A stretch of DNA of 64,000 bases from Chrysemys picta bellii (Eukaryota): assembly GCF_011386835.1 (NCBI RefSeq), contig NC_088798.1:12400001-12464000 (forward strand), written 5' to 3'. The position numbers and the translations under genes were made by a program. Below the pieces are notes generated by a model, which was not told where the DNA came from, ran no database searches, and worked only from the letters and a program-made list of their open reading frames with translations. This document shows, piece by piece, positions 21,709-48,534 of the stretch (its first letter is position 1; every line of letters begins with the position of its first letter).

Positions 21709-22057
21709 CTTGCCCCTCCCTCTCTCGCGGGGTGGGGGGGGGTGTTTATCGCGTCGGGTTCCCACTTCCGGCCCTAAGGTGAAGGACGAGGCTTGAGTGA
21801 TCTCGCGAGAATTCCCTCGCCGCGGGGCCTGACGGGAGAAGCAGTTTCCCTATCGGAGCTGAGCTGGGGAGGAGACGGAGACTCGCCTTCGCCGGGAACT
21901 ACGAGGCGAGTCACTTCCGGGACGGGCCGCGCGAGTCGGTTCGGGGCACCGTGGAACTAGCCCGTGCGCCCCGAGCCCCGCTACCCCGCCGGGCAGCAGT
22001 ACCCCGGGCCCATCGCCGACCCTCCACGCCCTGCCAGACACCCAGCTCCTCCGCCCG

Positions 22058-22797: not shown

Positions 22798-22899
22798 ATG
22801 GATAGATTTGTGATACGAAAACCCAAAGCTCAAGAAAGCCCTAGGAAAAGAGATCCAGGGGAAAAGGTTTACAAGCAAGCCACTATAGAATCTCTGAAG
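22798..22899 (+). CDS. TCEANC2: TCEANC2 first coding exon ([34 protein letters not shown])
   Basis: Donor AAG|gtaaga. Confidence 0.96.
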
Positions 22900-25800
22900 G
22901 TAAGAGCGGGGAGGGCAAAGGGAATGGATGGATAAGAGATCAGTATAGTATTTTCAGTATAGGCCTGATGGAGTTTATATGGCAACTTGTGTCCCAAAGG
23001 ATCACAGAGCACTTGAGAGAGTACATACAGCACCACTGAAATGCGTCTGAAATGGACAGCAGCCAAGAAGACAACAAACACTCAGCACAACAGCAAGGAG
23101 AATGAAAGTGTACTCCAGACACTGAAGCAAAGGCCTATTACAAAAACTGCCATGGAACATTTAATGTGCATCTAAAGCAGATAGGCCGTTGGTTTTTAAG
23201 CTCATTTAATGCATGTACACCATAAACTGAGGCAATATCAGATTTGGAGCTTGAAAGGATAATGTGTTAGATTCACCCTGCTGAGATATGAACTTACAGT
23301 TCTAGTGAGTCCAAGTCATTCATATCTCATGCTTAGATGTAGGACCCCCAATTAATAGGCCCCTGAATTTCCTTTCGGGCCATTAACACTGAAATGGGAT
23401 CACTTCCCACCCCTTTCTCTAGGGTAAAGATTTCAGCCCTAATCAGTATTTCAGAACCCAGTGTGCAATAGTCCCATTCAGTATCCTGTAAAATTGGGCA
23501 CAGTTTAGTTTAGCCCTTTCACTTGAGCATTAGGAATTCTGTAATTAGGTTGCTGCAAGAAATGGTGTTGGTCATTTAGGTGACACTTCTCTCCCTACTG
23601 AGCTAGTGCTCCACCACACCACGAGGGGGCACTGGATTGCTGGAAATACTATTTGTCAAATAAATATGTGTGGTCATTGAAGATCTTATGGCAAATGTTA
23701 GCAAGGTGTGGTGTTATTCCTGCTGTTCTGGCCAAAATTCTATCTTGGGTACTTACAGTCAGCCCGTGTCCAAGTTTACCTGTGGCCTCAATTTTAGAAG
23801 TGATTTATTTCCTCACCTGAAAACAGTCATGTAAAGTTGACACAGAATAGCTGCTGCATTCCTCCCCACATATGGCTGCCGTTCAGTGGTGTGTGCTCTG
23901 TCAGTAAACAGTACAATGGATAGGCTCGCTCCATCAGACTGAAAGGCATTCTATAAACAATGGTCAGATATTTGGTGACATGAATACAAGATTCTGCATG
24001 ATATAAGCTTTCTAAAGAAAGTTCAATAGATTTAGAATTTGTTTAGAATGTTTTATGATGAATCTCAAAAACAAAACAAAAAACCACAAACATAGGGTCA
24101 AACTTTCAGCCAGTCTTAGGTGTCCTGTAAATCTGTACATATAGATTTTGCAGCTTATACAGAGTAATTGTATATCTATCCATGTGCATATGCATTTCTA
24201 TGCTCATAATTTTGCAGATGTTAAGAAAGTATAGCTGAAACTTGAACTCATAATTAGTTGTAGAATACATAGGTAAAGGGAACAGTTACTATTTGAGATC
24301 ATTCTAAACCTATGGAAAGTCATAAATTAATGGAGATATCCCATCTCCTAGAACTGGAAGGGACCTTGAAAGGTCATTGAGTCCAGCCCCCTGCCTTCAC
24401 TAGCAGGACCAAGTACTGATTTTTCCCCAGATCCCTAAATGGCCCCCTCAAGGATTGAACTCACAACCCTGGGTTTAGCAGGCCAATGCTCAAACTACTG
24501 AGCTTCCCGCCCCGCCCATAATGCTCAAGTAGCAATACTAATGCTGGAATCATCATCCAAGAGTGCCATTAATCAGGTGCATGATTGTATTTATAAATGT
24601 TGTATTTACAGAACATAAAATGTGCATAAACTATTCAAATAGGCAGCAAGAATGCATTGTGGGACACATTTAGCATGTATAGGTGGATACAGCACCACCC
24701 TCCCTGCATGGGATTAAAGCATTTGACAAAGATTCCCTGAGCCATGTATTTTTCCTGAATCTCCACACTGAGCTGGCTTTTTAAGATTTGCAGAACTCCA
24801 TGCTTGAGGGGTAGAGGGAAAGGACACAGGCCAATTGGCCATTAATAATAATTTATTATTTATATTACCATAGCACTTTTCCTTCCCCTTTTGATCTTGC
24901 TGGAAGTGGGAATTGGGTGGTGAGTGTTCTCCCATTTGGGTCCTAATTGCAGAAGTTTAAAAAATAAATAAATTAGGAGTAACTTGCATTTCAACAGTGA
25001 GTGAAGTGATTCCTGCATAACCATTAGTCAGTCTGTATCTGAACATTTCTAACTTGCCCATCACTGTAGCATCTGGGCATGATATAGATAATTGAAAAGG
25101 ACAATCTGTGAGTAGAGGTGCATGCTTTTCACCCTCCCTTCTTGCACCACTTTCTTCAGTGACAGTTTCTTCATTGTTTTCCCCTCTGATACTTAGTTTT
25201 TTCATTGTTTTCCCCCTGCAGGTTATTTTGCAGCCAAGAGATTATTATTACACCTCTACCCCAATATAACGCTGTCCTCGGGAGCTAAAAAATCTTACCG
25301 CGTTATAGGTGAAACTGCGTTATATTGAACTTGGTTTGATCCGCCAGAGCGTGCAGCCCCGCCCCCCCAGAGCACTGCTTTACCGCGTTCTATCAGAATT
25401 CGTGTTATATCGGGTTGCGTTATATCGGGGTGGAGGTGTATTTATTGTGATAGCACTTGCGTCCCCAGTCTTGGATCAGGGCCTTATTGTGCGAGGTGCT
25501 TACAAACAGAACAGAAAATGTTGCCAAAGAGCTACAATCTAAATATAATACAGAGGAGGATACAAACAGCATATCAGCTGCAAAACCGTTGCTGAATGAT
25601 TGTAAAAGGTCTTGCACTACATCTTACGCGTAACAAGACTCGGGCTTCTTGTAATCCGTTGTCTGGGAGTGTCACAGCAAGATGCTTGGGGTGAAAGGCA
25701 CTATGTAAATGCCAGATACATTAATGACTGGCTTCTTTCAGTCCCTCTGTGGTGCTCCCTAGCTCCTTTTCTCTCTCTGCTGATACTACCAGCTTTAAGA

Positions 25801-28800
25801 TTTCCAAAGTTGAAAACAAAAGTGGGGCAGATTCAGGCGCTGCCTGGTACTAAGTTGCTACTAACAATATTATAATTAGCTGCTTCCCCCAGCCACTCCC
25901 TCTCATCCGCTCTTTATTAAGCCATTTATACAGTGGGCTTCCCAAAGTCTGAACACTTGCATAACTGTCTTCTTTGTCTAGGAGACATTTGCAGCTAAGT
26001 GCCCTGTGTTTGGCAGAATAAGATTAAGAATCTCACTTTGCCTTCTAGATATTTCTGTCCTGATTTACAACAGGGAGCTGCTCTCAAGCAATTACCTATC
26101 ATTTTGGACCATCACATATTCTGTGCTCTGGTTCATGTCATGATCAATAATTCATGTGTCGATAACAGCCCCATTAGCTGAGATGAAGGCCAACATCTTT
26201 ATTCGCAATAAGAATATTCCACTGTCCTAATGACTTTTCTCTTTCCCAGAGAGTGGTGGTTGTAGAAGACATAAAAAGATGGAAATCTGTCCTGGAGCTT
26301 CCTGGCCAGTCTAAAGAGAATTTGATCAAAGCCTTGGAGGAATTAAAGAAGAAAATACCTTCTAAGGATGTGTTACTTTCAACAAAAATAGGTGCACTTC
26401 GTATCCAATTTAGAGTGTGAAAATGAGGTGGATTTGTGTCCTTCACTTGTTGGATTTTTCTATACACAAGGGAATTGTTGACAGCATTTTTCAGTAATGG
26501 TCCTAAGCACTTTACCTTATTGTTGAATAAAATCCTGGTGGTAGGTAGCTACATAGTCTGCAAAATTCTTAGTACAGCAAAGAAAGAGTTCTCCTCGAAT
26601 TATTCACAATTATTTGGATGTTGCCTGCTTATAATCAAGGGCTGGGTCACTCCCTTCCATGGTAAAATATGTGGGAGAAGGACTAAGGGGGAGGAAATCT
26701 CCACAAAGTTCCTCCTTGATTGGTCATGGGTGGTTACTCTCCTGTGGAATGAGATGCGGGACCCATCTGCAAACCCAGAGAAGTCCTCGGGATCTGCTGG
26801 AGGCCCGAGCCATCAGCATAGAGGCCCTGCTCCTTAGTTACAGCTACCTCGGTGCTCCTTTCTCCCCCCCCTCCCCAAGGAATCCCCAATGTGGAGGGGG
26901 CTACGTGCTTATAACACCACAACAACTTGATTAATTTTCACAGGACTGGGGGAACAGGGTATGATGTGAGACCACCAGTCCCTGTCCTCTTTTTGTGCAG
27001 ATCCTGATCTTGCAGAGATCACCCCAAGATGTACTGGAGGGGGGAGAGTAGCAGTGCCAGGGCTGACAACCTCCCCCCCCCCCCCCCGCCTTTCTGTGCA
27101 AAAGCAGTAGGATCCTCATGCAGAGGGCCCTCTCTGTGTACGGACCAGGAGGAATGATCTGCTCTTCTGGTCTGAATTTTGTAATTGAATTTGCCATCTT
27201 GAGCACATTCAGCCTTCCTATATCACAGGAGTTCTCAAACTGGGAGTCGGGACCCCTCAGGGGATCGTGAGATTATTACATGGGGGGTTGCGAGCTGTCA
27301 GCCTCCACCCCAAACCCCGCTTTTCTTCCAGCATTTATAATGGTGTTAAATATATAAAAATGTGTTTTTAATTTATAAGCACTCAGAGGCTTGCTATGTG
27401 AAAGGGGTCACCAGTACAAATGTTTGAGAACCACTGCATCGGGTCTGCACCAGCGACAGATGAAGCAGTTGTGCTGTATGAAACCCAAGGAGTAACAGTG
27501 ACACCTTCTGGCCAATAGTGTTATCACTTAGAAATTAATACCAAGCAGAAGAAGAGGAACTGTGCCTTCTGCTTTGTGTTACGTCAGTGGTTTTCAACCT
27601 GTGGAATTTTTATTGGAATTGAAATTTTTTAGGGATCCGCAAATGAAAAAAAGTTGAAAACCACTGTGTTCGGTGGTATATCCCCTTTCAAAGGGCACAT
27701 TTCCTTGACGGTGCAGTAGCTCTCTGTGCATTTCCGTGGGCGTGAGAAACGTCACTGATGGTGATTGGAAAACAGAAGGAAATCATTACTTCCTCACTCA
27801 CATGTAAAAACATTGCAAATATCACTTAACATCCGCTTCCCCAAAGAATTTTTTAGCAAACATTTTTATTCTGTGTGAGCCAATCCTGAAGACTTTACAC
27901 TAGATTTACCATCTGTCTAAGTACTCGTATAGCCCTGTATTGTCTGAGCACCTCACTACACACCTCTGTGATCTAGGGAAACGCTGCTCCCATTTTACAG
28001 CTGGATAACCGAGCACCTAGGAAGTTACTCAGGCAAAACCACCATTGAATCAGTGAATAAGGACTCTGCAAGCGTTGGCCCCAGTGTTTTCATATTTGCA
28101 TTTGTGTCAAGTGCTTAGTTTTCTGCTGAAGCTGTCTGAGCCCTGGTCTACACTAGTCGGGGAAGATCAATCTAAGTTATGCAACTTCAGCTATGTGAAT
28201 GATGTAGTTGAAGTCCACGTACTTGGATCGACTTACTCGCAGCGCTGGAGTATAGCAGTCGAAAGGAGAGCGCTCGGGGGTCGATTTATCACATCTAGAC
28301 TAGACTCGATAAATCGATGCCTGCTGAATCGATCACTACCCGCGGATCTGGCGGGTAATGAAGACATACCCTGACTTACAATGCTTTGTGACTGTTTTGT
28401 CACTAATGTGCACTGACAGGTCTGGATTACACTTACCTACCCACCAAAGTTGAACGAACTCTGTTGCTGTTTCTATTTGGCAGGTCACACGGTGAATAAG
28501 ATGCGCAAACATTCAGACCATGACGTGGCCAATCTCGCAAAAGACGTTTACACTGAGTGGCGAACTTTCATCAAAGATTATTCAAACAAACCATCGATAG
28601 AAGTCAGGAGCGATCCCAAAACAGAGACTCTCAGGAAGAATGCACGGAAGCTACTTTGCGATGCTCTGGAACTAGAGGTAATATTCTTGATACTGTAGCT
28701 GCTGTATCGAGAGATCTCCGTTATTGGGCTTTTTTCAAAAGGAGTTAGTTTTCCTTTGCTCAGATTACTCTGGCTATTGAAAACAAAGGTGAAAATGACG

Positions 28801-36870: not shown

Positions 36871-38217
36871 GTGCCTATGAGCTCTGTCAATTAGACCAGA
36901 TTATGGGATAATCCTTGCCAATTAGAAATTATTATATACAAACCAATGATCTCCATACCTAGAATACGCCTTGAATGGATACACTTCTAGTTCTATGAAG
37001 CTGTAAACTTGCCAAGCAGTTTTCCCCCAGGCCAATATTTATCTTAAGATGAATTTTCACTAGTCCAAATTCTAAACCCTTGCACTGATTGGAACTGAGC
37101 AGGGAGGGAGAAGCCCTGGGAGAGGGAAGGCCAATGCCACATGATTCCAGGGTCCCTGCCACATAAATAATGTGCTGCAATAGACCCGAGGCTTTGTCCA
37201 AAGTGTGGGCTGAGCGGCACAGATGTCAGGATAAAATCCCCTAGCCAGACTTCTCTGGGAAAGCCTGCTACAACCTGCTGGCTTTCTGGACAAGGCTGTT
37301 GCTAGCACAGCTTCAGCTCTAACACTGAGAGGGCCTATGGGACACGTCCAGCCAATCTGCTCTCGTTTCCAACTCCTGTCAGAAGCCTGGTGAAATGAGC
37401 CCAACGCAGCAGCAGCTGGGTCATTGTACACATTAACCTGTGGAACTCATTGCTCACAGAGAACATATCTAGCAATTAAAGAGAGGAAAACCCAGCACAA
37501 TATTTCATCTACGGAGAGCTCCATCCCCTGTGAACTCAATCCCCCCTTACTGTGACATGGCTGAACCTTGGCACTGTTAGGAGGCCTCAATTTTCTGCTC
37601 AATAAACATAACTCACGCTCCATTATCCTATGTACAGTCAGGGAGCGCCTTTTGGCTGGGCATCTCAATGCCCTGAAAAGCAAGAATCAATGGTGCCTCC
37701 CACCACCCCAGTACAATCATTTTTGGAGAGGAGGGAGCAGAGCAATTAAGGGGCTCCCCAAGGGCATATCACAAGTCATTCTCAGAGCTGGGAGCAGACC
37801 CTAGCAGCCCTAACTCCCAGCCCCCTGCCGGCCACAGTTTAAAGGGCCAGTTGCTCAAACAAAGAGAATGCCTTTCATTACCGTAAGAGAGAGTCATCAC
37901 CACCCACCCTGGTTCTCCGCCTAAGCCCCCAACGCGTCAGGGGGACGTCTGACGTCTGACTCATCCAACGTGTCAGCTACCCGTGAGTGAGCCACCAAAG
38001 CCTAGCCGGTCCTTGAGTTTGGGCTGAGGGACATGTTTTTCTTTTCACACATCATGTACCAAATCACAGAGGGGAGGAAGAGGCGCTTGCTTCTTCCAGT
38101 GCTTGGTAGCATCAGGACGCTGAAGCCCTGGATGTTTAAAATAAGCTAGAGACAGACCTCTCAATATATCATTGCATTTTTAATTGTCCATATGCTCAAT
38201 CCATTATGTTTCCCCAG

Positions 38218-38296
38218 ATGGCAGGGATGCTTAACTACTACTTCCTCATCTGGGCTGTAATAATGAGGATCTCTGGCAGGCACCTGGCACCGAAAG
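38218..38296 (+). CDS. Novel cytokine receptor-like gene, signal peptide exon (MAGMLNYYFLIWAVIMRISGRHLAPK-G)
   Basis: tttccccag|ATG start, hydrophobic core, phase-1 donor AAG|gtaaaa. Confidence 0.82.
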
Positions 38297-41200
38297 GTAA
38301 AATACAAGATCTAGGCACTGTAAACTGAGACGCAAAAGAGGGGTGAATTCACTGCTATTACCCGTTGGAGATACTTCCTGCTGCTTGCAATTGAGATCAG
38401 TTTAATCATAGGGCTGTGATCATTCCATTATTATTTGTATTGCAGCCACGTCTAGGGAGCCCAATCATAGACCCGGCCCCATAGTGCTAGGTGCTGCACA
38501 AACACAGCCCTGCCCTGCCCCCGAAGAGCTTACAACACTGTGTCAGATGCTAAATCCGAGTGCGGGTAACATTCAGTGAAGTCTTGCTAGTGACAGAGGG
38601 CTTGATCCCGGCACAGGGCAGCTATGGGGTGTTGTGTCTATAAACAGAAGGTGAAAAGCGGTGAGCAGGCCACACAGTGTGGGGGAGTCCGATCCTGGAT
38701 GACTCAGCGCACTGTGCAGCTTCCACGTTATCTTGCCTCACAGCAGGAGCAAAGCCAGAGAGGGAAACGTGCAGTTCGGCAGCTCGTTAGCATGATGGGC
38801 CGCACACTGGGACCCAGGTCTCTGACCATAGCCTGCCCTTCCTTTACCCTGCCTGTGCATAAGTAAAGGGGCAAGCACACTAGGGGCTTGCAGCTTACTA
38901 CCAGGCAGTACACCTAGTACTCAATCTGACTTGCCCTGACACGGAGCTTCCACTTGCGCTGGAGCGCACCAACCTGCTGCATGATGGGCAAGGACTTGCA
39001 GGGTCAAAGCTACAGTCTTCAGCACAGAGAGACTTTTCTCTCCCTTTGTCTCCCCACTTCTGCCAGCTGGCTTGGAGGAGGATGCTGCTGCTGGGGCGGG
39101 GGGGGGGGGGGGAGCAGGGAGAGGAGGGGCGGGGCTTTGGGTACCCAGGAGGGCAGGTAGAAAGTGTTCTGGGCAGTGGGAGGGCAAGGCAGATGGGGCT
39201 GGGTATCCGCAGCTGTTTCTGTTACCTGAGGTTCAGCAATGGGCAAAGGGGGTCAGAGCTCCACAACGAGCTGTAAAATAGCAGTATGTGGTCGAAGGCC
39301 TTAATCCAGGTGTTCACAGTCACTGGGGGAAGAAAAACGTAGCATGCATGTGCTGAAAGCCACATTGCTAAATAAAATAGCTTTGTGGCTTTCATTGGCT
39401 TCCTCCTGCCCCAGATAGCAAAGGCTACTTTTCCATTGTATGGACCCAGGGCCTGCACAAAAGTAAATACATCGAATACATCAAATGTTGGTTTTAAGCA
39501 CAGCCGAGAAACAACCGGGGTGATACTTTTTTTGTACTCTTATCCATCAAGATAGGTAAACAGATATTTGCTTCCAGAGTTTGAACAAAACAAACCCCAT
39601 GTGGAGACTGTGCCTGCCAAGGTCCAGCCTGGAGCAAATTTTACAGCTAAATTATAAGCCCCTGAAAATAGAGTCTTAGAATTATCACTCCACGAGACGC
39701 CTAACTAGAGGCTGGAGGTGAAAACAGCCTGGCTGTGATGAAGGCTAGGCTGAGAAGATCTCCTGTTTAGGCTGTGTAAAAAGGCAATGTTTCCCCATGG
39801 GTATAGATGTATATTCGGGGGATATGCAAGATAAAGTGCAGTAAGATTATTGTAAAAAGCAACAGAGGGTCCTGTGGCACCTTTAAGACTAACAGAAGTA
39901 TTGGAGCATAAGCTTTCGTGGGTGAATGCCCCTGAACCCTCTGTTGCTTTTTACAGATTCAGACTAACCCGGCTACCCCTCTGATACTTAAGATTATTGT
40001 GGCTTTTTTGAATGTTAACTCCTCCCTACATAGAGCATGCTGAAGATTACCAGTAAGATGCTCCCTAGTTCCCGTGGCATAATGAAAATGGCCATCGATC
40101 TGTTTGATGATATATCACTCCGTTCTCCCTTTGCAATCTCTAGGAGCCTCGTCCTCCTTACACCTGCGGTGCATAGTGCTTTATCCAAAGTGCATGTCAT
40201 GCCACTGGACTCCACCGGATGGTGCTGCATCCAATACAACATTCCACCTCAGATATAAGATGAGGTAAATAAAACTGGGTGAAAACTTTATCCCAGCTAT
40301 GAAACACGATCCTTGAATTACTGCATGTTTATGGGAGACGCCACAGCATCCAGCAAGGGGATGTAACTCTCTTCTTTTGACATTATATCATTCACTGCAC
40401 GGAGTTCCCCCTCTTTCCCTTTATTCTAATGTATTGTGAGTGGTGTGGGCTGCAGTATTTTAGTCGCACAGTAGCTGCACTGTTTTGTCCGCTCAGATGT
40501 GGGGTGGGAATCAGAATAATTGTCAAAGTACCTTTCCACCGATATTGATACATTCTCCAGCATTGGCCTTCTTGGTGTTACTGCGGTGTCTGGATTATTC
40601 CTTTAGAATGCTGTGGTTAGAAACCAGTAGCACCAGCTCTTGTTAAGTGTGTATCTAAATCACACACACTAATGCGATGGCCTTTGATCTAACTACTCTT
40701 TCAGCCTCTCCTGCGGCACAGCGTACAGCATACCTCGACGAAAGGCGCTGGGGTGTTTGCAGCTGGACACACCAAGTGCACCTTTCCAGTCATCCACATG
40801 GACATAACCAGTGTTTGACAAAGCACATGCATATTCCATCAGCAGTGCGATGGCTTGAAAAATTAACTACCTAGAGATTTCCACATGCCTAAGGAGCAAA
40901 CCCAGAAAAATTGCAGCTTTAAAAAGGAGCTGCCTTTGGGAACATGCCCAAAGCGCAGGGGAGGGTGGAATGGGAGGGCATTGTATGTCTTCCTGCATAG
41001 AGACCTCTGGGTGGGATGGTCTCCTCACTCTTTGTTCACTTGGTTTAGGGGAGTAATAGAAGCCGAAGAATGCAAAGACTACATCACCAGTGGCCCCAAC
41101 TCCTGCTATTTCAGCCGCACCAACCTGTGCCTGTACTTGACCTATGAAATCTGGGTGGAAGCTGGGAACCAGATGTCAGAGAAGCTGATTGTTAACACTG

Positions 41201-44200
41201 AAGACATTGGTGTGTGGGGTGTGTGTGAGTGCGTGTCAGGGCGTGTTTGCGTGGTTGGTTCTTTGTTTCATTGTATTTATGGCAGAGAGGAAATTAGAGC
41301 AAATATTCACATTTGTGTCCTGACCCTGAGCCCACTGGAGTGGAAGGAGAGAGTCTTAATGACATTAATAGGCTTGGATCAAGCCCTTAGAGGAAGGTGT
41401 CATGCTCCAGTGGTCTTAGTCTAGGACTGGGAGCCAGAAAAAAATTGAGAGATTGATTCCCTCTGTGCCCATATACAAACCAAACGTCCTAGGTCTCAGT
41501 TTCCCCATCTATCAAGTAGGAATAATACAACCTCACCTTGGTGTCGCAAGGGATAATTATGACTCAAGCTTTCAAATGCCCTTTGTAGAGAAGTACCGTT
41601 ATTTAGGCAAGGGGCTGGCTAGTCCTGACCACCTAGGCCTTGTCTTCACTTGGAAAAAAGGTGCTTTTACCACGCGTTAGCTCAGCCATCATAATTAACA
41701 CGAGTTAAAATCTTGGGGCGGACCAGGCAGCTTTCAGTTTTCACATGTGTTAGCAGGTCAAACCTCAGCATGCTAACGTGAAAACTACCAACTGCCTTGT
41801 CCATGGTGGGGTTCTAATAGGTGCTAGCTAACACATGGTAAAACACCACCTTTTTTTTCCTACTGTGGACGCTCGCCCAATGTGAACGCAAAGCTCCCAC
41901 TAGAGCACCCGCTGCTTTTAACGTTCACAATGTGAACCAAAACCCAGGGAAGGTCAGATCCCAGTGTTGCTGCTCAGGCCCTCCTCTAATTATAAACAAA
42001 GGAGCTTCAGTCAACAGTGCAGCTCCAATAGTCTGGTGCTGAACAGGAGAGGGGGCATCGAGCCGGGGGCAAAGCCTCCGCGCATCCCTTATCTCGTGTG
42101 ATTCCATCCAGGGGCAGACCCCGTCCTTACTGGGCTTTTTACGCTCGCTTTATCTTGGCCTTCACCCGGTATCTGCTCTCTCCCCATCCCTCCAGACAGC
42201 CTGCTGGATTTAACACAGCCTCCCAATTCCTGCCTTGCTGCAGCTCCGCTTTACTTTTTTATTTTCCCTTCCCCACCACGGTTCCCACAGCACAGATACT
42301 TTGTGGAGGGGAGGGCTTGGGACAAAGGAGGATTATTGGCCCAGGAGTGCAATCTCTCTAACTCTGTCTGGGTGCCATAAAACCTGCCCTGTTCCATTCC
42401 GATGCAGCGTGGCGCTTGCAGCGAGAATGTGCTGTTTGCCACTGGCTCAGTTCTGCAGCCCCTGCATGTGAGTCGCTTCCCCTGAAGTCGATGGGGAGCT
42501 ACTCACATGCAGCAGCAGCTCGAGTCAGAGAACCAGGCCCCTCCTCCTTGTGTTTAAGGCAGAACACAGAGATAGCAGCAAGTAAACTAATCCCGGAGTG
42601 TCCTGGCAAGAAGGGCCAGGATGAGTCAGATTTCAATTGGATTAGACTCTAGAAAGTCAGCATGTCACCCCTGTGAGCTTAGAGCCTCTGAACATCTAGA
42701 GCAGGGAGATGGTCTGATAGAGGTCCCTTCTGAACAGTGTCAGGGGACCGGGATCTAACGCAGCACGCCCCAGCCACGTTGTAGATGGGTCTAAGCCAGG
42801 TCAATAACCACGTCTTTTAAGGACTGTAACATGAATCTCATACGGATTGTTCCCATCTACACAGGCGAGACCCAGCCGTAATGAAATACAGCCGGGGCAC
42901 TACTGTGTGCTAATCCAGTCCCCTGACACTGAGAAATGTGCTGCATCGACAGGCCCATGACTAGAGCTGTTTCTTCCCATATATTTTGTTTGGGCAGCAT
43001 GTAAACTCCCAAGCAGGGGGTGGGTGGCAGCCCCTGAATGTAATGGGCCTCTTTCAAAGGCAGTGGTGGTTAAAATGCCCCGACATTGGCTCCAGTTTCC
43101 CTCTCTCCCATCTCTTTGCTACCAGCTTCTCTTCACTATAAACTGCCTTTTTTTTTTTTGTTCAGCCTACAGCAGCGTGAGCTACCCATCCCCCCAGCTG
43201 CAGCGTGAAACAGCTCAGCCTTTTCCTCCGCTGGTGGCTGTTGCTTGATTCAATNNNNNNNNNNNNNNNNNNNNNNNNNNNNNNNNNNNNNNNNNNNNNN
43301 NNNNNNNNNNNNNNNNNNNNNNNNNNNNNNNNNNNNNNNNNNNNNNNNNNNNNNNNNNNNNNNNNNNNNNNNNNNNNNNNNNNNNNNNNNNNNNNNNNNN
43401 NNNNNNNNNNNNNNNNNNNNNNNNNNGAGTAGAGTCTCTCTCTCTCTCACACAGAGTGTGTGTACAATAGGAATAGAGTCCTCTCACACACACACACACA
43501 CACACACAAAGTGTGCATAGGAGTAGTGTCTCTCTCTCACACACACATACACACAAAGTGTGCGATAGTAGACACACACACATGAAGTGAGTGTGTGATA
43601 GGAGTCAAATCTCTCTCTCTCTCTAACACACACACACAGCAAGTGTGCAATAGGAGCGGAGTCTTTCTTTTTGCCACAAGCTGGGACTGGACAACAGGAT
43701 GGATCCCTCAAAAATTGCCCTGTTTTGTTCCTTCCCACTGAAGCATCTGGCACCAGCCACTGTCGGGAAGACAGGCTTCTGGGATAGCTGGACCATTGTT
43801 AGTCCAGTTCTTATATGGATGTATGGCCGTTCTTGTATTTCCATCCAGGGACTGACCTGGTTACTTCTGCACTGAGACCGGTTTGTCTCCCCCAAAGGAG
43901 GGTTCTTTCCCCCGACACACAAACCTCTCCCCTCTGATCCCTCAGCAAACAGCCTCTGCCCTTGCACGCTCCAAGAGGCAGCTCCAGAAACCAGCGACTG
44001 TAGCACACACAACAGACCGAGGAGCAGGAAAATCACCCCCAGATTGAGAAGCACATGCAGTAGTTTACTCAGTCATAATACTTCTCTGCCCTATTGTGCC
44101 TAGAAGAATTACATTAAAGACTTTCTTCACAGTGAGACTTACGCTTAGTAACATGGAGGGCTCTTTTCTATTGGCCAATGTGACTTCTCAGGATTTCCCC

Positions 44201-47200
44201 CGCTTCCTCGAAGACTTTGGCCTGATTATGAAAAGTGGCCTGATTCAGGAAAGCAGCACTTAAGCGTGTGCTTCAGTGCATTCCTGGATCAGGGTTTTGC
44301 TTGGGGGAAGTGAAGTTATAGGCCCTTGTGTAGTTATGTAACAAAGAGCACTGGGGCCAGATTCTGGGAAGAGCTCGCTGAAGTCAATGTGGTTTGTGGT
44401 GCTCATCACCACCACTTGGGTTTTTTCAGTGGTTGGGATTGGGAGGAGGGGAGTTCCTTTGGATCCCCATAAAACCTCAGGGCCAGTCTTGCGCTGGCAG
44501 GACTCCTAGGTTGAGCAGTGATGCTGGCAGATATTTTAGGAACATCTGTTTCACAAGTGCTGCCCACTAAGACAGGATAGCATAGGGCAATTTTACTGCT
44601 AGTGGCCATGGGCTCCTGGTGAGAAGCTGCTATATTGATTACTGCCAGCCAAAAGAAACTTTAGTTTGCTTTTAAACAGCAAGACTCACACTGCTGGCTT
44701 TAGCCAAAATTCACATGGGAACTGCACTCCCTGTCCGGACTGCTGAGATGGCAGTTCCTCTTCCATTGTAGATGGGGAAGATACTAATAAATCTGTTTTA
44801 GTGATTTCCTCCTCTTGTGACGAGGGGTACAATTTTCAGAAACAACTAAATGACTTAGGCGCCAAGGCCCAGATCCTCAAAGGTACTTAGGCACCTAATG
44901 CTCATTGATTTCAGTAGTGCCTAAATACCTTGGAGGATCTGGGGCCTAGTCCCATTTTCAAAATGAAGTAGGCACCAAAGTCTCATTGAAAACCTATGAG
45001 CCTTAGGCTTCTGAGTGTATAAGTCACTTGGAAATGGGACCTAGCCATCTAAATCGCTCAGGCGCTTTCAAAAATTTTACCCTAGAGCATGAACAAACCA
45101 CTGATCACACACATACACCTGGGCACATAGCCAACCCTCCGCCCATGTCCCATATACCCACAATGTGAGTTTAGCCCCTCCTTTCACCTTCTTTTTTTTA
45201 TAGCTAAAACTGAACCACCAGAGGGCCTGAAGGCCACTGGATTTGGCACCCACCTATCCGTAGAATGGGGGTACCCACCTGGCGTGGCAGCCTCCTATTT
45301 CCCACTGGTGTTTGAGCTTCAGTACCAAGAACAGGGGAGTGGCGAATGGGAGGTGAGTCACTTTTGCTTTCCTTGCCTTCCATGGGCTGGTCTGTAGTGT
45401 AACAGGCGTGGGGCTTTCCTTACCAAAGCCCTGGGGAACCAGGCCTAGTTTGCAAGGAACCTTGTGCCGCAGAAGTCTGCCCACTGCCTGGGAAACGTGA
45501 ACGTGGGCTAGGAACGTTCAGAAGATAGGGTGTTCAACAGCGGCAGACGAGCTGTCACAAGTAAAGCAAAACAATAAGCAATTGTGTCATCCCGGTTGTA
45601 GCTCCACGGACTTCACTGGTCTTACATCAGAGATGGCTCTGACCCTGCGGTCAGTATCCTAGGATATTGACTTGTCAGTTCAGTATTGATCATATGTAAC
45701 ACCGACAGACCCCAGTCATTGGTGGAGGGATCGAATCTGGGACCTCTGGAGCTAAATGCATGAGCCTTTACTGCATGAGCTAAAAGCCATGTATATGCCT
45801 CTTAGCTAAGGCTGTAGCAGACTCATTAATCTCTAAGCGGTCTCGGTGCCCTAGAGGGGGCAGAACACCACACTCAGGAGGTGTGTGGGTTACACATACA
45901 CTCTGGAGGAGCACTGAAAGTGACTGAAAAGAAAGGCCCCTTTTAGGAAACAATATAGCCGTTGGCCAGGAGGGTGGACTAACCAGCTGAACCTCTCTGA
46001 TGTCTATGATTCTTTTAGAAGAAAAGACAACCCCAGCTCAGGATCCAAACTTCATGGCCAGATTCTGTCCCGTTCCCACCCCTTTCTGCCCCTTTCCTAC
46101 CCCTTTCGGCCCCTCTGGCCGCATCAAGGGCCAGTAAGCTGCCTTAACAGGGCAGCTAAAGATTCTTCCAACATAGGCGAGTCCATGGCTGGCACAGATT
46201 CAGCATAACCAGGTCTGGGTCATGTCTTCCTAGCCCCCTCCCCCATCCAATGTATGGAGATGTCGGGGGTGTGGCCGGAGCATGCTGTGCTCCAGCAATC
46301 TCCACTGGCATAACGGCTCCTCTTGAGTTATTACAAGCCAGTGTAGTTTGGAGCAGCCCTGCTATAAACTGCGTGAGTCTTGGAGCCTGTAAGCAGGTGG
46401 AGCTCCACTGACTTATGCAGCGTTGGACAAGCTCACTCATGCTGTCCTGGGTTTTGTCCTAACTAGACTTCAACAGCTTTTCCTGCAAATGCATTAGCTG
46501 CAGACACAATCAATGTGACAGCTACGCTATAATAAAAATGGTTTCAGAAGAAGTGGTTTTTTACCCATGAAAGCTTATGCCCAAATAAATCTGTTAGTCT
46601 TTAAGATGCCACCAGACTCCTTGTTGTTTTAGAGTAGGTGTAGATTTCCAAATGCTTGCTCCATAAACCATATTAATGATATTTTACTTGCAGTATATCA
46701 TTTAGCCACTAGATGTCTCTGTGTGCTATACATTTCCAGATAGGTTGAGGTCCTTGGTAAACAAAAGAGACAAAGCTGGAACTCAGGCTGCATGGAAGTC
46801 TGTTTCCTTCTGTCTATAGATCACAGTTGTTTTATTTTATGAGTACCTCCTCTTTAAGACAGACTGTGATTCCATATACTATGGAATATTCTAAACAATG
46901 TTGTTTGAGAATAATTCAAAATTTATTTAAAAAGGAAACATATTTATTTAAACAGGTGAGTCCTTCCAGGGTGTGGTTTATTAGTCCAGGGTCCCAAGAC
47001 CTCCTGCTTTCTTCTCCTGGGGCTGACACTGATTTCTTCTATGGCCTTGAGACAGTCACTTTGCTGTGCCTCAGTTTCCTTGTTGTGTGCATAACTTAAT
47101 GTAAATGTAAAAATGCTTTGGAGATGCTGAGTGATAAGTATTATTATCTTTCTTCCTCTCAGTTATTTCTCCTAACTGAAGAATAAAGGGGCAAAGGAAT

Positions 47201-47451
47201 TACTCTTGTTCTTGGGAAGTGAAGTGAAAGTAATTTAAATAGGTTTTTCTCTTTCTCCGTATTAGCAAGAGCCTGATGTGGGTGAGCAGACCAGCTACTA
47301 TGTTTATGGTGTGAAGCCAGACACCGTGTACATCCTGGCGGTCCGCTGCAAGAACTCGGACGGGAAAGGCTTTTGGAGTGACTGGAGCACCCCGGTTCTA
47401 GTCAATTCTGGCCAAGCCACAGCAAAACCAGGACAATCTGAAGCACAGTGA
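38218..47451 (+). CDS. Secreted class I cytokine receptor-like protein (CRLF1/PRLR-related sequence, EBI3-like architecture), 231 aa
   Basis: join(38218-38296, 40144-40264, 41049-41209, 45204-45352, 47266-47451), 696 nt open, all GT-AG, intron phases 1-2-1-0. Signal peptide, CX9CXW, second Cys pair, EPP hinge and WSDWS are present, followed by a stop and poly(A) signals. Confidence 0.93.
39854..39988. mobile_element. Penelope family A inverted fragment with 12-bp direct flanks
   Basis: aaaaagcaacagagg...cctctgttgcttttt palindromic arms. taagattattgt occurs at 39842-39853 and 39989-40000. Confidence 0.8.
40144..40264 (+). CDS. Novel gene exon D1a (ASSSLHLRCIVLYPKCMSCHWTPPDGAASNTTFHLRYKM-R)
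   Basis: Acceptor ttgcaatctctag, donor GAG|gtaaat, CX9CXW motif, phase 1 in and phase 2 out. Confidence 0.92.
41049..41209 (+). CDS. Novel gene exon D1b (GVIEAEECKDYITSGPNSCYFSRTNLCLYLTYEIWVEAGNQMSEKLIVNTEDI-A)
   Basis: Acceptor tcacttggtttag, donor TTG|gtgtgt. ECKDYITSGPNSCYF is PRLR-like and YEIWVEA is CRLF1-like. Phase 2 in, phase 1 out. Confidence 0.95.
41636..41878. mobile_element. Decayed Harbinger-like MITE
   Basis: Termini ggccttgtcttcact ... actgtggacgctcgcc with internal symmetry. Confidence 0.5.
43255..43426. other. Assembly gap (172 N)
   Basis: Run of n. Confidence 1.
43427..43655. repeat. Compound (TC)n/(CA)n minisatellite, about 5 visible units ending in ...gtgtg..atag
   Basis: Direct reading. 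It abuts the gap and probably caused it. Confidence 0.9.
43674..43818 (+). mobile_element. CR1 3' UTR fragment
   Basis: Matches the 3' UTR of the CR1 at 11570-11746. Confidence 0.7.
44865..44947. repeat. Palindromic hairpin element (ggcccagatcctcaaagg ... ccttggaggatctggggcc), nested in related hairpin elements
   Basis: Self-complementary arms, same family as 61383-61480. Confidence 0.7.
45204..45352 (+). CDS. Novel gene exon D2a (KTEPPEGLKATGFGTHLSVEWGYPPGVAASYFPLVFELQYQEQGSGEWE)
   Basis: Strong acceptor cttctttttttatag, perfect donor GAG|gtgagt. EPP hinge and LSVEWxxPP FN3 strand. Phase 1 in, phase 0 out. Confidence 0.95.
45695..45894. mobile_element. 200-bp solo-LTR-like element with an internal antisense tRNA-like cassette
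   Basis: TGTAAC...GTTACA termini, 4-bp TSD CATA, minus-strand A/B-box-like sequence. Confidence 0.7.
46544..46630 (+). mobile_element. Penelope family A 3' fragment, decayed hammerhead core
   Basis: cagaagaagtgg...cccatgaaagcttatgcccaaataaatctgttagtctttaagatgccaccagactcc. Confidence 0.75.
46975..47140 (+). mobile_element. CORE-SINE (MIR-like) fragment
   Basis: cttgagacagtcactttgctgtgcctcagtttcc. Confidence 0.55.
47266..47451 (+). CDS. Novel gene terminal exon D2b (QEPDVGEQTSYYVYGVKPDTVYILAVRCKNSDGKGFWSDWSTPVLVNSGQATAKPGQSEAQ*)
   Basis: Acceptor ttttctctttctccgtattag, phase 0, WSXWS box, TGA at 47449-47451. Confidence 0.95.
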   Translation, partial: QEPDVGEQTSYYVYGVKPDTVYILAVRCKNSDGKGFWSDWSTPVLVNSGQATAKPGQSEAQ

Positions 47452-47623
47452 AACAGAAGATTCACCACACAAGGCAATGGTTCATCTAGCCCAGCATGCT
47501 GCCTCTGGAAGTGACCTACAGCCAGTGCTTTGTTAACAGCATCGCAATAGACAGGGCATGTGAATATCGGGTCCCAAGAGCAGATTTTTTTGGTGATTCA
47601 TTTTGTGAAAACTACTGCTTCTT

Positions 47624-47633
47624 ATTAAATAAA
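47624..47633 (+). terminator. Overlapping ATTAAA/AATAAA polyadenylation signals of the novel gene
   Basis: attaaataaa about 175 nt after the stop codon. Confidence 0.7.
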
Positions 47634-48534
47634 AGAAACCATAAAAGCTAAGGTACCATTTGTATTATTGTTAGCTAGCAGGAAGGCGCTAACACTCTGT
47701 CTGTGCTTGGTCTGTAAATGCTGAGGTATTTGTGTGAGCTCCAGTTCCCAGTCCCACTCCTAGCTGGGACCTCTTGACAAGCCAGAAAGCCTTACTGACA
47801 ATCACAGAGTCGCAGCTGGAGCTGGGAAAGGTATTCTTCACTTCCTGCAGCAACTCCCAGATTTCCTGTGATAAAGCGATCAGGGGCCAGGGGATGAAAC
47901 AGTTAAGGCTGATACATCAGGCAGCATCATTAAGTTTGAAAGTTAAAAACAACCTAAATGAGATTGAAGGTTGTGCTTTCAGAGCCATTGTTTTAGGCTG
48001 CCTGCAGGCTCAGGGATAATTCTCAGCAGTTACACGTGGCTCACATTTGGAAGATTATTATTATTATTATTAATTCTTCTTCTTCAGCCATGAAGGCTAG
48101 AAACTTACCACTTTTAAAAAAGAAAGCTGAGATTCTACAGAATCTAAATATACCGCGTAGGCCACATGAATATACCAAGTGGGCTCCGTGTTTGACGCCT
48201 CTGCTTAAGAGAGTGCTAAGGTATCATTCGTTTTTGTGACCGGGTTAGCTTGGAAACCTGGAATTTATAAACCATTCCTGGAGGAAGAGAGAATGTGTGA
48301 CTCATAGTTCGCAACTCTCCTGACATTGGCCTTTAAAATGTGAGGCAAACCCATCAAATACTAGGTGGAAGAACATAAAAGCATAATAAATTGCTACATT
48401 TATATAGCACCTACAAAGTAGAGACACATCCAATGCCATGCAGAGTCAGCCACCTTTGGAGCAGAGTGTGGTAGATGATGTGCACACAGAGATGGACAGT
48501 TTATTTTGGCCAAGCTAAACCTTTACTGTGCTTG

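What the first reader, a model, noticed from the sequence alone, without database searches (positions are those of the whole stretch)
38218..47451. Intact gene for a secreted two-FN3 class I cytokine receptor with no counterpart known to me at the human locus
Seen in sequence: five exons with canonical sites splice into one 696-nt frame, MAGMLNYYFLIWAVIMRISGRHLAPKGASSSLHLRCIVLYPKCMSCHWTPPDGAASNTTFHLRYKMRGVIEAEECKDYITSGPNSCYFSRTNLCLYLTYEIWVEAGNQMSEKLIVNTEDIAKTEPPEGLKATGFGTHLSVEWGYPPGVAASYFPLVFELQYQEQGSGEWEQEPDVGEQTSYYVYGVKPDTVYILAVRCKNSDGKGFWSDWSTPVLVNSGQATAKPGQSEAQ*. Established: CX9CXW, the second Cys pair, WSXWS and intron phases 1-2-1-0 define the cytokine receptor homology region, and signal peptide plus two FN3 domains only is the layout of EBI3, the IL-27/IL-35 beta chain. 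The sequence is a mosaic (from memory): ECKDYITSGPNSCYF vs PRLR ECPDYITGGPNSCHF; YEIWVEA, LSVEW..PP and QTS...G.KP.TVY..VRC vs CRLF1; DGKGFWSDWS vs gp130 DGKGYWSDWS. Inference: it is either the soluble subunit of an unrecognised heterodimeric cytokine or a secreted ligand-binding/decoy protein. It may already carry an automated LOC label, which I cannot check.
Basis: partly seen in the sequence, partly recalled or inferred. Interest (0 to 1): 0.93.

Follow-up and report, generated by a model that had tools for sequence, protein, structure and literature searches.

The report
Orphan secreted cytokine receptor, CRLF1 paralogue
This turtle window holds a real, spliced and conserved gene for a small secreted cytokine-binding protein that birds, crocodilians, turtles and some amphibians share, that databases mislabel as CRLF1 or prolactin receptor, and whose ligand is unknown.

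Summary
Five exons with AG/GT sites (38218-38296, 40144-40264, 41049-41209, 45204-45352, 47266-47451, + strand) give a 696-nt frame of 231 aa. The protein has a signal peptide and one cytokine-receptor homology module (two FN3 domains, two Cys pairs, WSDWS). It has no membrane anchor.

The N gap (43255-43426) lies in intron 3. Transcript contigs from three runs join 41209 to 45204 directly, so no exon is hidden there.

The gene sits TMEM59(-) / TCEANC2(+) / gene(+). TCEANC2 lies upstream in sea turtles, gharial, a caecilian and an eagle. The eagle copy is intact but mis-annotated.

dN/dS between turtle and gharial is about 0.3.

It is not CRLF1: true CRLF1 exists separately and is 80-94% conserved. 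It is not EBI3, which ranks far lower in profile searches. It is not PRLR, because it has no TM or box 1 and falls outside that clade.

It forms its own clade (100/99). A lungfish protein carrying a CRLF1-type Ig domain is its probable sister. With the TMEM59/TMEM59L paralogy, this suggests an ancient CRLF1 ohnologue.

The likely function is a soluble cytokine-binding chain, either a chaperone/alpha subunit or a decoy. The ligand was not tested. No paper on it was found. It is a new member of a known kind, of moderate to high interest.

The parts
38218..38296 (+). Coding exon 1 (79 nt, ends in phase 1). It holds the ATG, the signal peptide (hydrophobic core YYFLIWAVIM) and the start of the mature chain. 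An AG acceptor lies immediately before the ATG.
   Evidence: AG before, GT after; the only hydrophobic stretch; helix 5-15, then low pLDDT. It is 100% identical in Chelonia and Lepidochelys.
40144..40264 (+). Coding exon 2 (121 nt): first half of FN3 domain 1, with C36..C46-x-W48 and N57-T-T.
   Evidence: IL6Ra-bind; joint 40264|41049 in runs X4 and X10.
41049..41209 (+). Coding exon 3 (161 nt): second half of domain 1, with the second disulphide (C75/C86) and the ECKDYITSGPNSCYF loop.
   Evidence: PRLR 1e-7, CRLF1 2e-6; joints on both sides.
43255..43426 (.). Assembly gap (N run) inside intron 3, followed by (CA)n-rich sequence. It is not coding.
   Evidence: the joint 41209|45204 skips 3994 nt including the gap in runs X4, X9 and X10. 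Orthologues have no extra residues there.
45204..45352 (+). Coding exon 4 (149 nt, ends in phase 0): linker KTEPP and first half of FN3 domain 2, including the conserved S-Y-F-P-L-x-F-E-L-x-Y stretch.
   Evidence: Invariant columns are listed.
47266..47451 (+). Coding exon 5 (186 nt including TGA): second half of domain 2, VRCK, WSDWS, an 18-residue hydrophilic tail and the stop codon.
   Evidence: LEPR 3e-13, gp130 8e-9. In one search the loose end behind 45352 equals the start of this exon.
47452..47650 (+). 3' UTR with overlapping ATTAAA/AATAAA signals at 47624-47633. The extent is inferred.
   Evidence: The share of words held by RNA-type runs (0.10-0.16 of 45100-47700) fits exons 4-5 plus a short UTR.
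38133..38217 (+). Conserved block directly upstream of the ATG, ending in a polypyrimidine tract plus AG. It is the probable acceptor for an upstream non-coding exon or for TCEANC2 read-through.
   Evidence: turtle/eagle/gharial alignment, near-invariant over the last ~45 nt. The Gavialis model P0007 and the fusion model P0008 splice exactly onto the ATG.
36882..36957 (.). Conserved non-coding element 1.3 kb upstream (87% turtle-eagle), rich in TAAT/GGATTA-type homeodomain-like motifs. It is a candidate enhancer or promoter element.
38446..38565 (+). Optional in-frame 120-nt cassette exon (AG..GT, open in the window). It corresponds to the 40-aa insert of the Chelonia 'isoform X1'.
   Evidence: Its use in this species was not checked.
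22798..28749 (+). Upstream neighbour TCEANC2 (first three coding exons mapped), on the same strand.
   Evidence: tblastn of P0008; Med26 domain. The same neighbour is seen in five other species.
13187..21765 (-). TMEM59 (BSMAP family) on the opposite strand, head-to-head with TCEANC2 across a CpG-rich region.
   Evidence: BSMAP 2e-20 at 13187-13528. Searches show GC 0.51-0.52 at 20-24 kb. Exon 1 of the ORF at 21274-21765 was recognised from memory.

Best explanation
What it is. The locus is a real protein-coding gene for a ~231-aa secreted protein: a signal peptide followed by a single cytokine-receptor homology module. That module has two FN3 domains, two disulphides in domain 1 and WSDWS in domain 2. 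There is no transmembrane segment, no GPI-type tail and no cytoplasmic part.

Where it belongs. It represents an unnamed orthology group located between TCEANC2 and CDCP2, next to TMEM59. The group is present in turtles, crocodilians, at least accipitrid birds, salamanders and caecilians. A lungfish protein that still has a CRLF1-type Ig domain is its probable sister. The group is a deep paralogue of CRLF1. The most likely origin is an ohnologue from the early vertebrate genome duplications: TMEM59/this gene on one paralogon, TMEM59L/CRLF1 on the other. The tetrapod lineage then lost the Ig domain and CRLF1's C-terminal tail.

Mechanism (inferred, not shown). Like CRLF1, EBI3 and soluble GH/PRL receptors, it should clasp a four-helix-bundle cytokine at the elbow between the two FN3 domains. 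It keeps aromatic residues (Y96; Y152/F153) at the two positions that are the ligand hot spots W72/W139 of PRLR. I think it most likely acts as a soluble alpha-type or chaperone subunit that is co-secreted with its cytokine and presents it to signalling receptors. Simple sequestration is the close second.

Shown: gene structure, splicing, conservation, fold, phylogenetic distinctness, synteny.
Inferred: secretion, ohnology, ligand binding, mode of action.
For: Gene model and frame.

Spliced transcripts: contigs in three runs from two studies, including the junction across the gap and into exon 5. A 915-nt Logan contig from another turtle encodes spliced exons 3-5 (P0001).

Orthologues with the same five-exon structure:
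- Chelonia, Lepidochelys and Gavialis.
- An intact but mis-annotated eagle gene with exon lengths 79/121/161/149.
- Amphibian proteins at 53-58% identity.

Selection: dN/dS is 0.28-0.36 between turtle and gharial. Across the family 47 columns are invariant, including all canonical Cys/Trp residues and WSxWS.

Fold: AF2 pLDDT 87 with two beta-sandwiches. The best Foldseek hits are PRLR, CRLF1, GHR and gp130 ectodomains.

Not CRLF1: true CRLF1 (80-94% identical from shark to bird) exists separately in turtles, axolotl and lungfish, at a REX1BD-linked locus.

Own clade: 100/99 support. Lungfish P0038 is sister at 89-94.

CRLF1 link:
- The P0038 Ig domain matches only CRLF1 Ig domains (1e-14 to 1e-11). 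gp130 is not hit.
- The family-profile ranking against PDB is CRLF1 1e-43, PRLR 3e-37, gp130 1e-28, GHR 1e-20, EBI3 1e-18, CNTFR 1e-14.

Synteny: TCEANC2 lies upstream in six species and a CUB/ZP gene lies downstream in the eagle. TMEM59 is identified by Pfam. CRLF1-TMEM59L-...-SSBP4 are adjacent in tilapia (PMC3276181). The human order TMEM59-TCEANC2-CDCP2-...-SSBP3 is from my own knowledge.

Hot-spot alignment to rat PRLR.
Against: - No ligand, partner or secretion was tested. The signal peptide was judged by eye, hydropathy and the model only.
- The deep branching among this family, CRLF1, PRLR/GHR and a lamprey fragment is unresolved. The AU test does not reject grouping with CRLF1 (p 0.44) or with PRLR (p 0.125).
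- The lungfish link is not starred, and lungfish+CRLF1 is not rejected (p 0.30). Lungfish synteny could not be read.
- EBI3, CNTFR, IL6R, IL11RA, IL12B and fish CRFA4 sequences could not be put in the tree.
- TMEM59L was not within 10 kb of turtle or snake CRFL1, i.e. CRLF1, so the paralogon argument rests on a tilapia table and on memory.
- The 5' end of the transcript is undefined. Fusion models with TCEANC2 exist.
- The tissue of expression is unknown, because the runs are coded and their RNA status is a guess supported only by the spliced contigs.
Confidence: 0.7

Rival explanations
1. It is a circulating binding protein or decoy for a GH/PRL-family hormone (for example prolactin or the non-mammalian prolactin-like PRL2). 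In other words, it would be a germline-encoded soluble PRLR-like ectodomain that buffers or blocks hormone action rather than forming a composite cytokine.
For: - Exon 3 is most similar to PRLR (1e-7), with a nearly identical second-disulphide loop.
- PRLR is the second-best family by profile (3e-37) and the top Foldseek hit.
- Aromatic residues sit at both PRLR/GHR hot-spot positions.
- The AU test does not reject a clade with PRLR (p 0.125).
- From my knowledge, PRL2 is a non-mammalian hormone, which would fit loss of a dedicated binder in mammals.
Against: - CRLF1 scores higher than PRLR with both the single sequence and the family profile.
- The probable lungfish sister carries a CRLF1-type Ig domain, which the PRLR/GHR group lacks.
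- The locus is on the TMEM59 paralogon, not beside GHR/PRLR.
- No binding was tested.
Confidence: 0.2
2. It is the tetrapod/lungfish counterpart of CRFA4. CRFA4 is the orphan GHR/PRLR-like class I receptor described only in coelacanth, gar and teleosts and thought to be lost in tetrapods. On this reading the gene has been reduced to a secreted ectodomain.
For: - The taxonomic ranges are complementary. [quoted passage not shown]
- Both have a canonical WSXWS and PRLR-like features (PMC1963337).
- Both are orphans.
Against: - No fish protein other than PRLR and CRLF1 orthologues appeared among the 150 best HMMER hits. None forms a clade next to this family.
- CRFA4 has a transmembrane and intracellular part.
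- The lungfish relative has a CRLF1-type Ig domain.
- No CRFA4 sequence or locus could be obtained here, so this rival is not excluded.
Confidence: 0.08
3. It is a fast-evolving, translocated orthologue of EBI3 (IL-27/IL-35 beta chain).
For: - It has the same layout (signal peptide plus CHR only) and nearly the same length.
- Exon 4 has a weak best match to EBI3, K-x-D/E-P-P-E-G.
- There is a sub-threshold Pfam FN3_IL27B_N hit.
Against: - EBI3 ranks below CRLF1, PRLR, gp130, LEPR, IL31RA, GCSFR and GHR with the family profile (1e-18 to 1e-14 against 1e-43).
- FN3_IL27B_N scores 19.7 bits against a cut-off of 42.
- The locus is the TMEM59/TCEANC2 interval in six species from caecilian to bird, so there is no sign of recent translocation.
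Confidence: 0.02
4. It is not an independent functional gene. On this reading it is a transcribed relic, or merely 3' exons of TCEANC2 read-through transcripts.
For: - Several annotation pipelines fuse its exons to TCEANC2 (P0008, P0016, P0312).
- An acceptor site abuts the ATG.
- Transcript depth in the runs laid is low.
Against: - The open frame and exon structure are kept from caecilians to birds.
- dN/dS is about 0.3.
- The Kozak-like ATG and signal peptide are conserved.
- All canonical structural residues are invariant.
- Independent NCBI models start at this ATG.
Confidence: 0.02

Closest known systems
CRLF1 (cytokine receptor-like factor 1, CLF-1/NR6), the secreted partner of CLCF1
   Same: - It is a secreted class I receptor chain without a membrane anchor.
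- It is the best sequence match: 8d7h_A at 1.3e-29 with the single sequence and 1.2e-43 with the family profile.
- Shared motifs include YEIWVEA, QTS...KP.TVY..VRC and WSxWS.
- It is the second Foldseek hit.
- The probable lungfish sister has a CRLF1-type Ig domain.
- The loci are paralogous: TMEM59 versus TMEM59L.
   Different: - Identity is only 31-34%.
- There is no N-terminal Ig domain, no CRLF1 loop insertion before WSxWS and no basic C-terminal tail.
- It lies outside the CRLF1 clade (100/99).
- It evolves several times faster, judged by branch lengths.
- The chromosomal neighbours differ: TCEANC2 rather than REX1BD.
- True CRLF1 coexists in the same taxa.
Prolactin receptor ectodomain / GH-binding protein
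   Same: - It has a two-FN3 CHR without an Ig domain.
- The second-disulphide loop is nearly identical.
- Aromatic residues occupy the two ligand hot-spot positions.
- PRLR is the top Foldseek match.
- Soluble forms of these receptors act as hormone-binding proteins (established knowledge).
   Different: - It is encoded as a dedicated secreted protein. There is no TM or box-1 exon, and the stop codon falls 18 residues after WSDWS.
- It lies outside the PRLR/GHR clade (100/100).
- It is not at the GHR/PRLR locus.
EBI3 (IL-27B)
   Same: It has an identical domain layout and size. It is a soluble beta or alpha-like chain of composite cytokines.
   Different: - Sequence similarity is much lower.
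- The Pfam IL27B domain falls below threshold.
- It has the canonical WSDWS. EBI3's degenerate motif is quoted from memory.
- The locus is different.
Lungfish XP_043940793.1 (P0038, auto-named 'cytokine receptor-like factor 1')
   Same: - It is the closest non-tetrapod protein, with 40-44% identity in the CHR.
- Family-specific motifs are shared: CKDYVTGG.N.C.F, FPLMFEL.Y and RCK...KG.WS.WS.
- It is secreted-type, with no TM.
   Different: - It keeps a CRLF1-type Ig domain and is 310 aa long.
- Its sister position has only 89-94% support.
- Its synteny could not be read, because the gene spans 304 kb.
CRFA4 (orphan fish/coelacanth class I receptor)
   Same: - It is an orphan with no mammalian orthologue.
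- It has PRLR-like features and a canonical WSXWS.
- Its taxonomic range is complementary (PMC1963337, PMC6997183).
   Different: - It is a membrane receptor with a short intracellular domain.
- It was not detectably closer to this family than PRLR is in the HMMER search.
- It was not compared directly.

Membership tests
Class I cytokine receptor superfamily (cytokine receptor homology module) | Two tandem FN3-type beta-sandwich domains | tested here: met
   Pfam fn3, EpoR_lig-bind and IL6Ra-bind score above their cut-offs on the 95%-identical orthologue. The AF2 model has pLDDT 87 with two beta domains. Foldseek matches PRLR, CRLF1, GHR and gp130 at E about 1e-14.
Class I cytokine receptor superfamily (cytokine receptor homology module) | Two conserved disulphide pairs in domain 1 (CX9-10CXW ... 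CX10-15C) | tested here: met
   C36-x9-C46-x-W48 and C75-x10-C86 are invariant across the family.
Class I cytokine receptor superfamily (cytokine receptor homology module) | WSXWS motif near the end of domain 2 | tested here: met
   WSDWS lies at 207-211. W207, S208, W210 and S211 are invariant.
Class I cytokine receptor superfamily (cytokine receptor homology module) | Conserved exon pattern of the CHR (four exons, phases 1-2-1-0) | tested here: met
   The same exon lengths occur in gharial and eagle. That this pattern is typical of the family is established knowledge.
CRLF1 orthologues | N-terminal Ig-like C2 domain before the CHR | tested here: not met
   There is no Ig domain in the protein and no remnant in the window.
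CRLF1 orthologues | Falls inside the CRLF1 clade; very high conservation (80-94% from shark to bird) | tested here: not met
   Identity is 31-34%. It lies outside the 100/99 CRLF1 clade. True CRLF1 coexists in turtles, axolotl and lungfish.
CRLF1 orthologues | Locus REX1BD-CRLF1-TMEM59L | tested here: not met
   This gene lies downstream of TCEANC2 and TMEM59. Turtle and snake CRLF1 lie next to REX1BD. The tilapia gene order comes from PMC3276181.
EBI3 / IL-27B | Signal peptide plus CHR only, about 230 aa, no anchor | tested here: met
EBI3 / IL-27B | Sequence membership (Pfam FN3_IL27B_N; closest to EBI3 among CHRs) | tested here: not met
   FN3_IL27B_N scores 19.7 bits against a cut-off of 42. 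EBI3 ranks below seven other receptor families with the family profile.
PRLR/GHR group (incl. CRFA4) | Single-pass TM and cytoplasmic box 1 | tested here: not met
   The stop codon falls 18 residues after WSDWS in the terminal exon, there is no second hydrophobic segment, and the orthologues end the same way.
PRLR/GHR group (incl. CRFA4) | Falls inside the PRLR/GHR clade | tested here: inconclusive
   It lies outside the PRLR clade (100/100), but a sister relation is not rejected (p-AU 0.125). CRFA4 was not available for comparison.
Soluble subunits of composite cytokines (CRLF1/CLCF1, EBI3/p28, p40/p35) | Forms a stable secreted complex with a four-helix cytokine | not testable with these tools
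No complex prediction was run.

The most novel reading that the evidence does not exclude
The protein is the dedicated soluble chain of a composite (heterodimeric) cytokine that mammals do not have. It would pair with an IL-6/IL-12-type or PRL-type four-helix ligand in birds, reptiles and amphibians. It would therefore define a signalling axis lost on the mammalian line. It would also be a surviving 2R ohnologue of CRLF1.
Probability: 0.3. Interest if true: 0.8.

Novelty: new member of a known kind. Interest (0 to 1): 0.6.

Why it matters
Soluble class I receptor chains such as CRLF1, EBI3 and p40 define whole cytokines (CLCF1/CRLF1, IL-27, IL-35, IL-12/23).

An additional, anciently conserved chain that mammals apparently lack has two consequences:
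- The cytokine repertoire of birds, reptiles and amphibians is not a subset of the mammalian one.
- An orphan ligand-receptor pair is waiting to be matched.

The finding also has a practical side. Current annotations call this gene 'CRLF1', 'prolactin receptor-like' or 'GH receptor-like', or fuse it to TCEANC2. That can corrupt orthology tables and expression studies in turtles, crocodilians, birds and axolotl.

If the CRLF1-ohnologue reading holds, it adds a fourth-paralogon member to the 1p/19p cytokine-receptor paralogy.

Tried and rejected
Checks that closed off a reading:
- Hidden exon or frame break in the N gap. Rejected, because transcripts join exon 3 to exon 4 directly and the orthologues are colinear.
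- Orthology to CRLF1, including teleost crlf1a/b. Rejected, because both fish copies are 75-80% identical to bird CRLF1 and fall in the CRLF1 clade.
- Remnant Ig exon in the window. None was found.

Searches that gave nothing usable:
- TMEM59L within 10 kb upstream of turtle or snake CRLF1. Only CR1 repeat matches were found.
- CDCP2 exons in window 48-64 kb, using the eagle locus. No hits, so the downstream neighbour in this window is unconfirmed.
- Lungfish synteny. The gene spans 304 kb, and no DNA or neighbours were returned.
- Two CRLF1 isoform look-ups were not on record.
- Literature searches for TCEANC2 plus cytokine receptor, CRLF1-like names, accession numbers, 'lost in mammals' and ohnologues. 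Nothing on this gene was found. Ocampo Daza & Larhammar 2017 is not held.
- The ESM Atlas feature search gave only generic class I/II receptor clusters.
- Our own earlier findings have nothing near this place.

Limits of the searches:
- The representative HMMER search was swamped by giant multi-FN3 proteins, so only the top 150 hits could be inspected. EBI3, CNTFR, IL6R and CRFA4 did not reach that list.
- The full 231-aa window protein could not be given to remote tools by reference because it is spliced. Exon pieces, an ORF containing exon 3 with a region restriction, and the 95%-identical Lepidochelys protein P0004 were used instead.
- No complex prediction was run, for lack of a candidate partner sequence.

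Full report
**Observation**

The exons are 38218-38296, 40144-40264, 41049-41209, 45204-45352 and 47266-47451 on the + strand. Every internal boundary is AG/GT. The lengths are 79, 121, 161, 149 and 186 nt, the phases are 1-2-1-0, and the frame is 696 nt encoding 231 aa.

The protein has these features:
- C36-x9-C46-x-W48, and a second pair C75/C86.
- One N-x-T site, N57.
- WSDWS at 207-211.
- A single hydrophobic stretch, at the N-terminus.

Exon pieces hit IL6Ra-bind, EpoR_lig-bind and fn3 weakly. The full-length 95%-identical orthologue passes the Pfam cut-offs for fn3, EpoR_lig-bind and IL6Ra-bind.

**The gap**

The only N run of the window (43255-43426) lies in intron 3.

I laid Logan contigs of four runs on 40100-46099. 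The runs carry the same species label as the DNA holders, and their RNA status is a guess.
- Joint 40264|41049 appears in two runs.
- Joint 41209|45204, which skips 3994 nt including the gap, appears in three runs from two studies. Both joints have GT..AG ends.
- One 466-nt contig carries exons 2, 3 and 4, then 33 letters identical to the first letters of exon 5.
- Intronic bins have no depth except over repeats, which fits RNA.

All orthologous proteins read straight through this junction. So the gap hides no coding exon and does not affect the frame.

The exon 1-2 junction was outside what I could show directly. A contig has 297 letters upstream of exon 2. A two-record loose-end consensus differs from the end of exon 1 only in the way a tie-broken mixture containing exon 1 would (my inference).

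Two contig variants, 41083 A>G (I79V) and 45237 C>T (T132I), fall at positions that also vary between turtle species.

**Relatives**

The PDB sequence search with exon pieces confirmed the 'mosaic'. Exon 3 is best matched by PRLR (1e-7), then CRLF1 and GHR. Exon 5 is best matched by LEPR, gp130 and PRLR. Exon 4 matches EBI3 weakly.

Using an ORF that contains exon 3, with the scoring restricted to the exon, I found full-length orthologues:
- Chelonia, Lepidochelys (95% identical, also 231 aa), Pelodiscus and Carettochelys.
- Gavialis (71%).
- Axolotl, Pleurodeles and two caecilians (53-58%).
- Bird fragments.

Their automatic names are 'cytokine receptor-like factor 1', 'prolactin receptor-like' and 'growth hormone receptor-like'. 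Several models fuse the exons to TCEANC2.

A full HMMER scan of 1.8 billion representatives added two relatives:
- A 310-aa lungfish protein (Ig plus CHR, 40-44% identity).
- A lamprey fragment.

After those, the next hits are CRLF1 and PRLR orthologues.

**Not CRLF1, EBI3 or PRLR**

A search with bird CRLF1 shows that true CRLF1 is 80-94% identical from sharks to birds. It exists separately in turtles, axolotl and lungfish, and teleost crlf1a and crlf1b both belong to it.

In maximum-likelihood trees of the CHR:
- The tetrapod proteins, including my eagle model, form one clade (100/99).
- The lungfish protein is their sister (89-94/80-82, not starred).
- This lineage, CRLF1 (100/99), PRLR/GHR (100/100) and the lamprey fragment form an unresolved polytomy, separated from gp130.
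- AU tests reject neither a CRLF1 sister relation (p 0.44) nor a PRLR one (p 0.125).

A family profile ranks PDB chains as follows:

| Chain | E-value |
|---|---|
| CRLF1 | 1e-43 |
| PRLR | 3e-37 |
| gp130 | 1e-28 |
| LEPR | 1e-27 |
| GHR | 1e-20 |
| EBI3 | 1e-18 to 1e-14 |
| IL6R | 1e-16 |
| CNTFR | 1e-14 |

EBI3 is therefore not the orthologue. Its Pfam N-domain model also stays far below threshold.

**Locus and paralogy**

In the window, TMEM59 lies on the minus strand (BSMAP 2e-20). TCEANC2 exons lie on the plus strand at 22.8-28.7 kb.

TCEANC2 (Med26/TFIIS_M) sits immediately upstream on the same strand in Chelonia, Lepidochelys, Gavialis, the caecilian Rhinatrema and the eagle Morphnus. 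In the eagle a CUB/ZP gene, CDCP2-like, follows on the other strand. This matches the human order TMEM59-TCEANC2-CDCP2 (my knowledge), where no such receptor is annotated.

CRLF1 sits elsewhere. It lies next to REX1BD in turtle and snake. In tilapia the order is C19orf60-CRLF1-TMEM59L-...-SSBP4 (PMC3276181). Chicken GGA28 likewise holds TMEM59L, KLHL26, CRTC1 and KXD1 (PMC7379350).

From my knowledge, TMEM59/TMEM59L and SSBP3/SSBP4 are paralogue pairs on 1p32 and 19p13. The arrangement therefore fits an ohnologue pair, this gene and CRLF1.

Independent support comes from the lungfish relative. Its Ig domain matches only CRLF1 Ig domains (1e-14 to 1e-11), while gp130 is not hit at all. The window holds no Ig remnant, so the tetrapod lineage would have lost that exon.

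**Constraint**

- CDS reconstructed by homology from Chelonia, Lepidochelys and Gavialis are intact, with the same exon lengths.
- dN/dS is 0.28-0.36 for turtle against gharial and 0.30-0.49 against sea turtles.
- The eagle locus, annotated only as an 805-bp 'GH receptor-like' fragment, contains all five exons with lengths 79/121/161/149 and an open 261-aa frame.
- Forty-seven columns are invariant across nine family members, including all canonical Cys and Trp residues and WSxWS.

**Structure and mechanism**

AlphaFold2 on a 35-row alignment gives pLDDT 87. The model has an N-terminal helix (the signal peptide), a disordered linker and two beta-sandwich domains. Foldseek's best PDB matches are PRLR, CRLF1, GHR and gp130 ectodomains.

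In the HMMER alignment to rat PRLR, Y96 and Y152 align with the two tryptophans known, from the literature as I remember it, as the ligand hot spots of PRLR/GHR. Both positions stay aromatic in the family.

From this I infer a secreted, ligand-competent CHR. Because its closest relative and probable ohnologue CRLF1 is a co-secreted chaperone/alpha-type subunit, I rank that mode first and a binding-protein/decoy mode second. Nothing here tests either.

**5' end and regulation**

The 85 nt before the ATG are strongly conserved between turtle, gharial and eagle, and they end in a polypyrimidine tract plus AG. The Gavialis model and the TCEANC2 fusion models splice exactly onto the ATG. So coding exon 1 is probably preceded by an untranslated exon, and some read-through from TCEANC2 is likely.

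A second conserved block (36882-36957, 87% turtle-eagle) is full of TAAT/GGATTA-type motifs.

**Literature**

Eight searches found no paper on this gene.

The nearest published idea is CRFA4. It is an orphan GHR/PRLR-like receptor of coelacanth, gar and teleosts, said to be absent from tetrapods (PMC1963337, PMC6997183). The complementary range makes it a rival. However, CRFA4 is a membrane receptor, no fish clade appeared next to this family, and the lungfish Ig domain points to CRLF1. I could not obtain a CRFA4 sequence to settle it.

**Verdict**

This is a real gene of an unnamed, mis-annotated orthology group of secreted class I cytokine receptors. It is a deep paralogue, probably an ohnologue, of CRLF1, and its ligand is unknown. 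I class it as a new member of a known kind, with interest 0.6.

Noticed in passing
L006:8422-11700 (eagle Morphnus guianensis, GCA_045345515.1): The bird orthologue is intact: five exons, lengths 79/121/161/149 plus a last exon, 261 aa. It is annotated only as an 805-bp 'growth hormone receptor-like' fragment, and related bird records file its exons under 'TCEANC2 isoform X3'.
   Followed up: yes
window 36882-36957: A non-coding block is 87% identical between turtle and eagle and is also conserved in gharial. It is dense in TAAT, CAATTAG and GGGATAATC motifs and could be a homeodomain-type enhancer of this gene or of TCEANC2.
   Followed up: partly
window 38446-38565: A 120-nt AG..GT cassette is open in frame and would add 40 residues between the signal peptide and domain 1. 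It is the insert of the Chelonia 'isoform X1' (P0003). Its use in this species was not checked.
   Followed up: partly
window 46956-47099 and 44514-44617: Two alternative exons were seen. One is a terminal exon used in a TCEANC2-fusion model (P0008), which replaces the WSXWS exon with a hydrophobic tail. The other is a 104-nt intronic exon joined to exon 4 in one low-depth contig (joint 44617|45204, run X7).
   Followed up: no
window 20000-24000: A CpG-rich region (GC 0.51-0.52) lies between the first exons of TMEM59 (minus strand) and TCEANC2 (plus strand, from 22798). It looks like a bidirectional promoter and contains long Pro/Gly/Arg-rich spurious ORFs on both strands.
   Followed up: no
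window 61803-63085: CR1/LINE-type reverse-transcriptase fragments are present (RVT_1 4e-11 on the 283-aa minus-strand ORF). CR1 pieces also lie inside TMEM59 introns at about 10.4-11.9 kb, and these matched repeats in the CRLF1 locus of Mauremys.
   Followed up: partly
window 43427-43641: An imperfect (CA)n/(CT)n microsatellite array directly follows the assembly gap. It is the probable reason for the gap.
   Followed up: no
P0086 (sea lamprey, UniRef S4R6E3, 172-aa fragment): A lamprey CHR fragment shares family-like motifs (EC.DY.TSG.NSCYF, SFYPLQFQLRY). It sits in the unresolved polytomy with this family, CRLF1 and PRLR/GHR. It may represent the pre-duplication or a cyclostome member.
   Followed up: partly
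window 41083 and 45237: Transcript contigs differ from the assembly at two coding sites: A>G gives I79V and C>T gives T132I. Both alternative residues are the states found in other turtles, so they are probably polymorphisms.
   Followed up: partly
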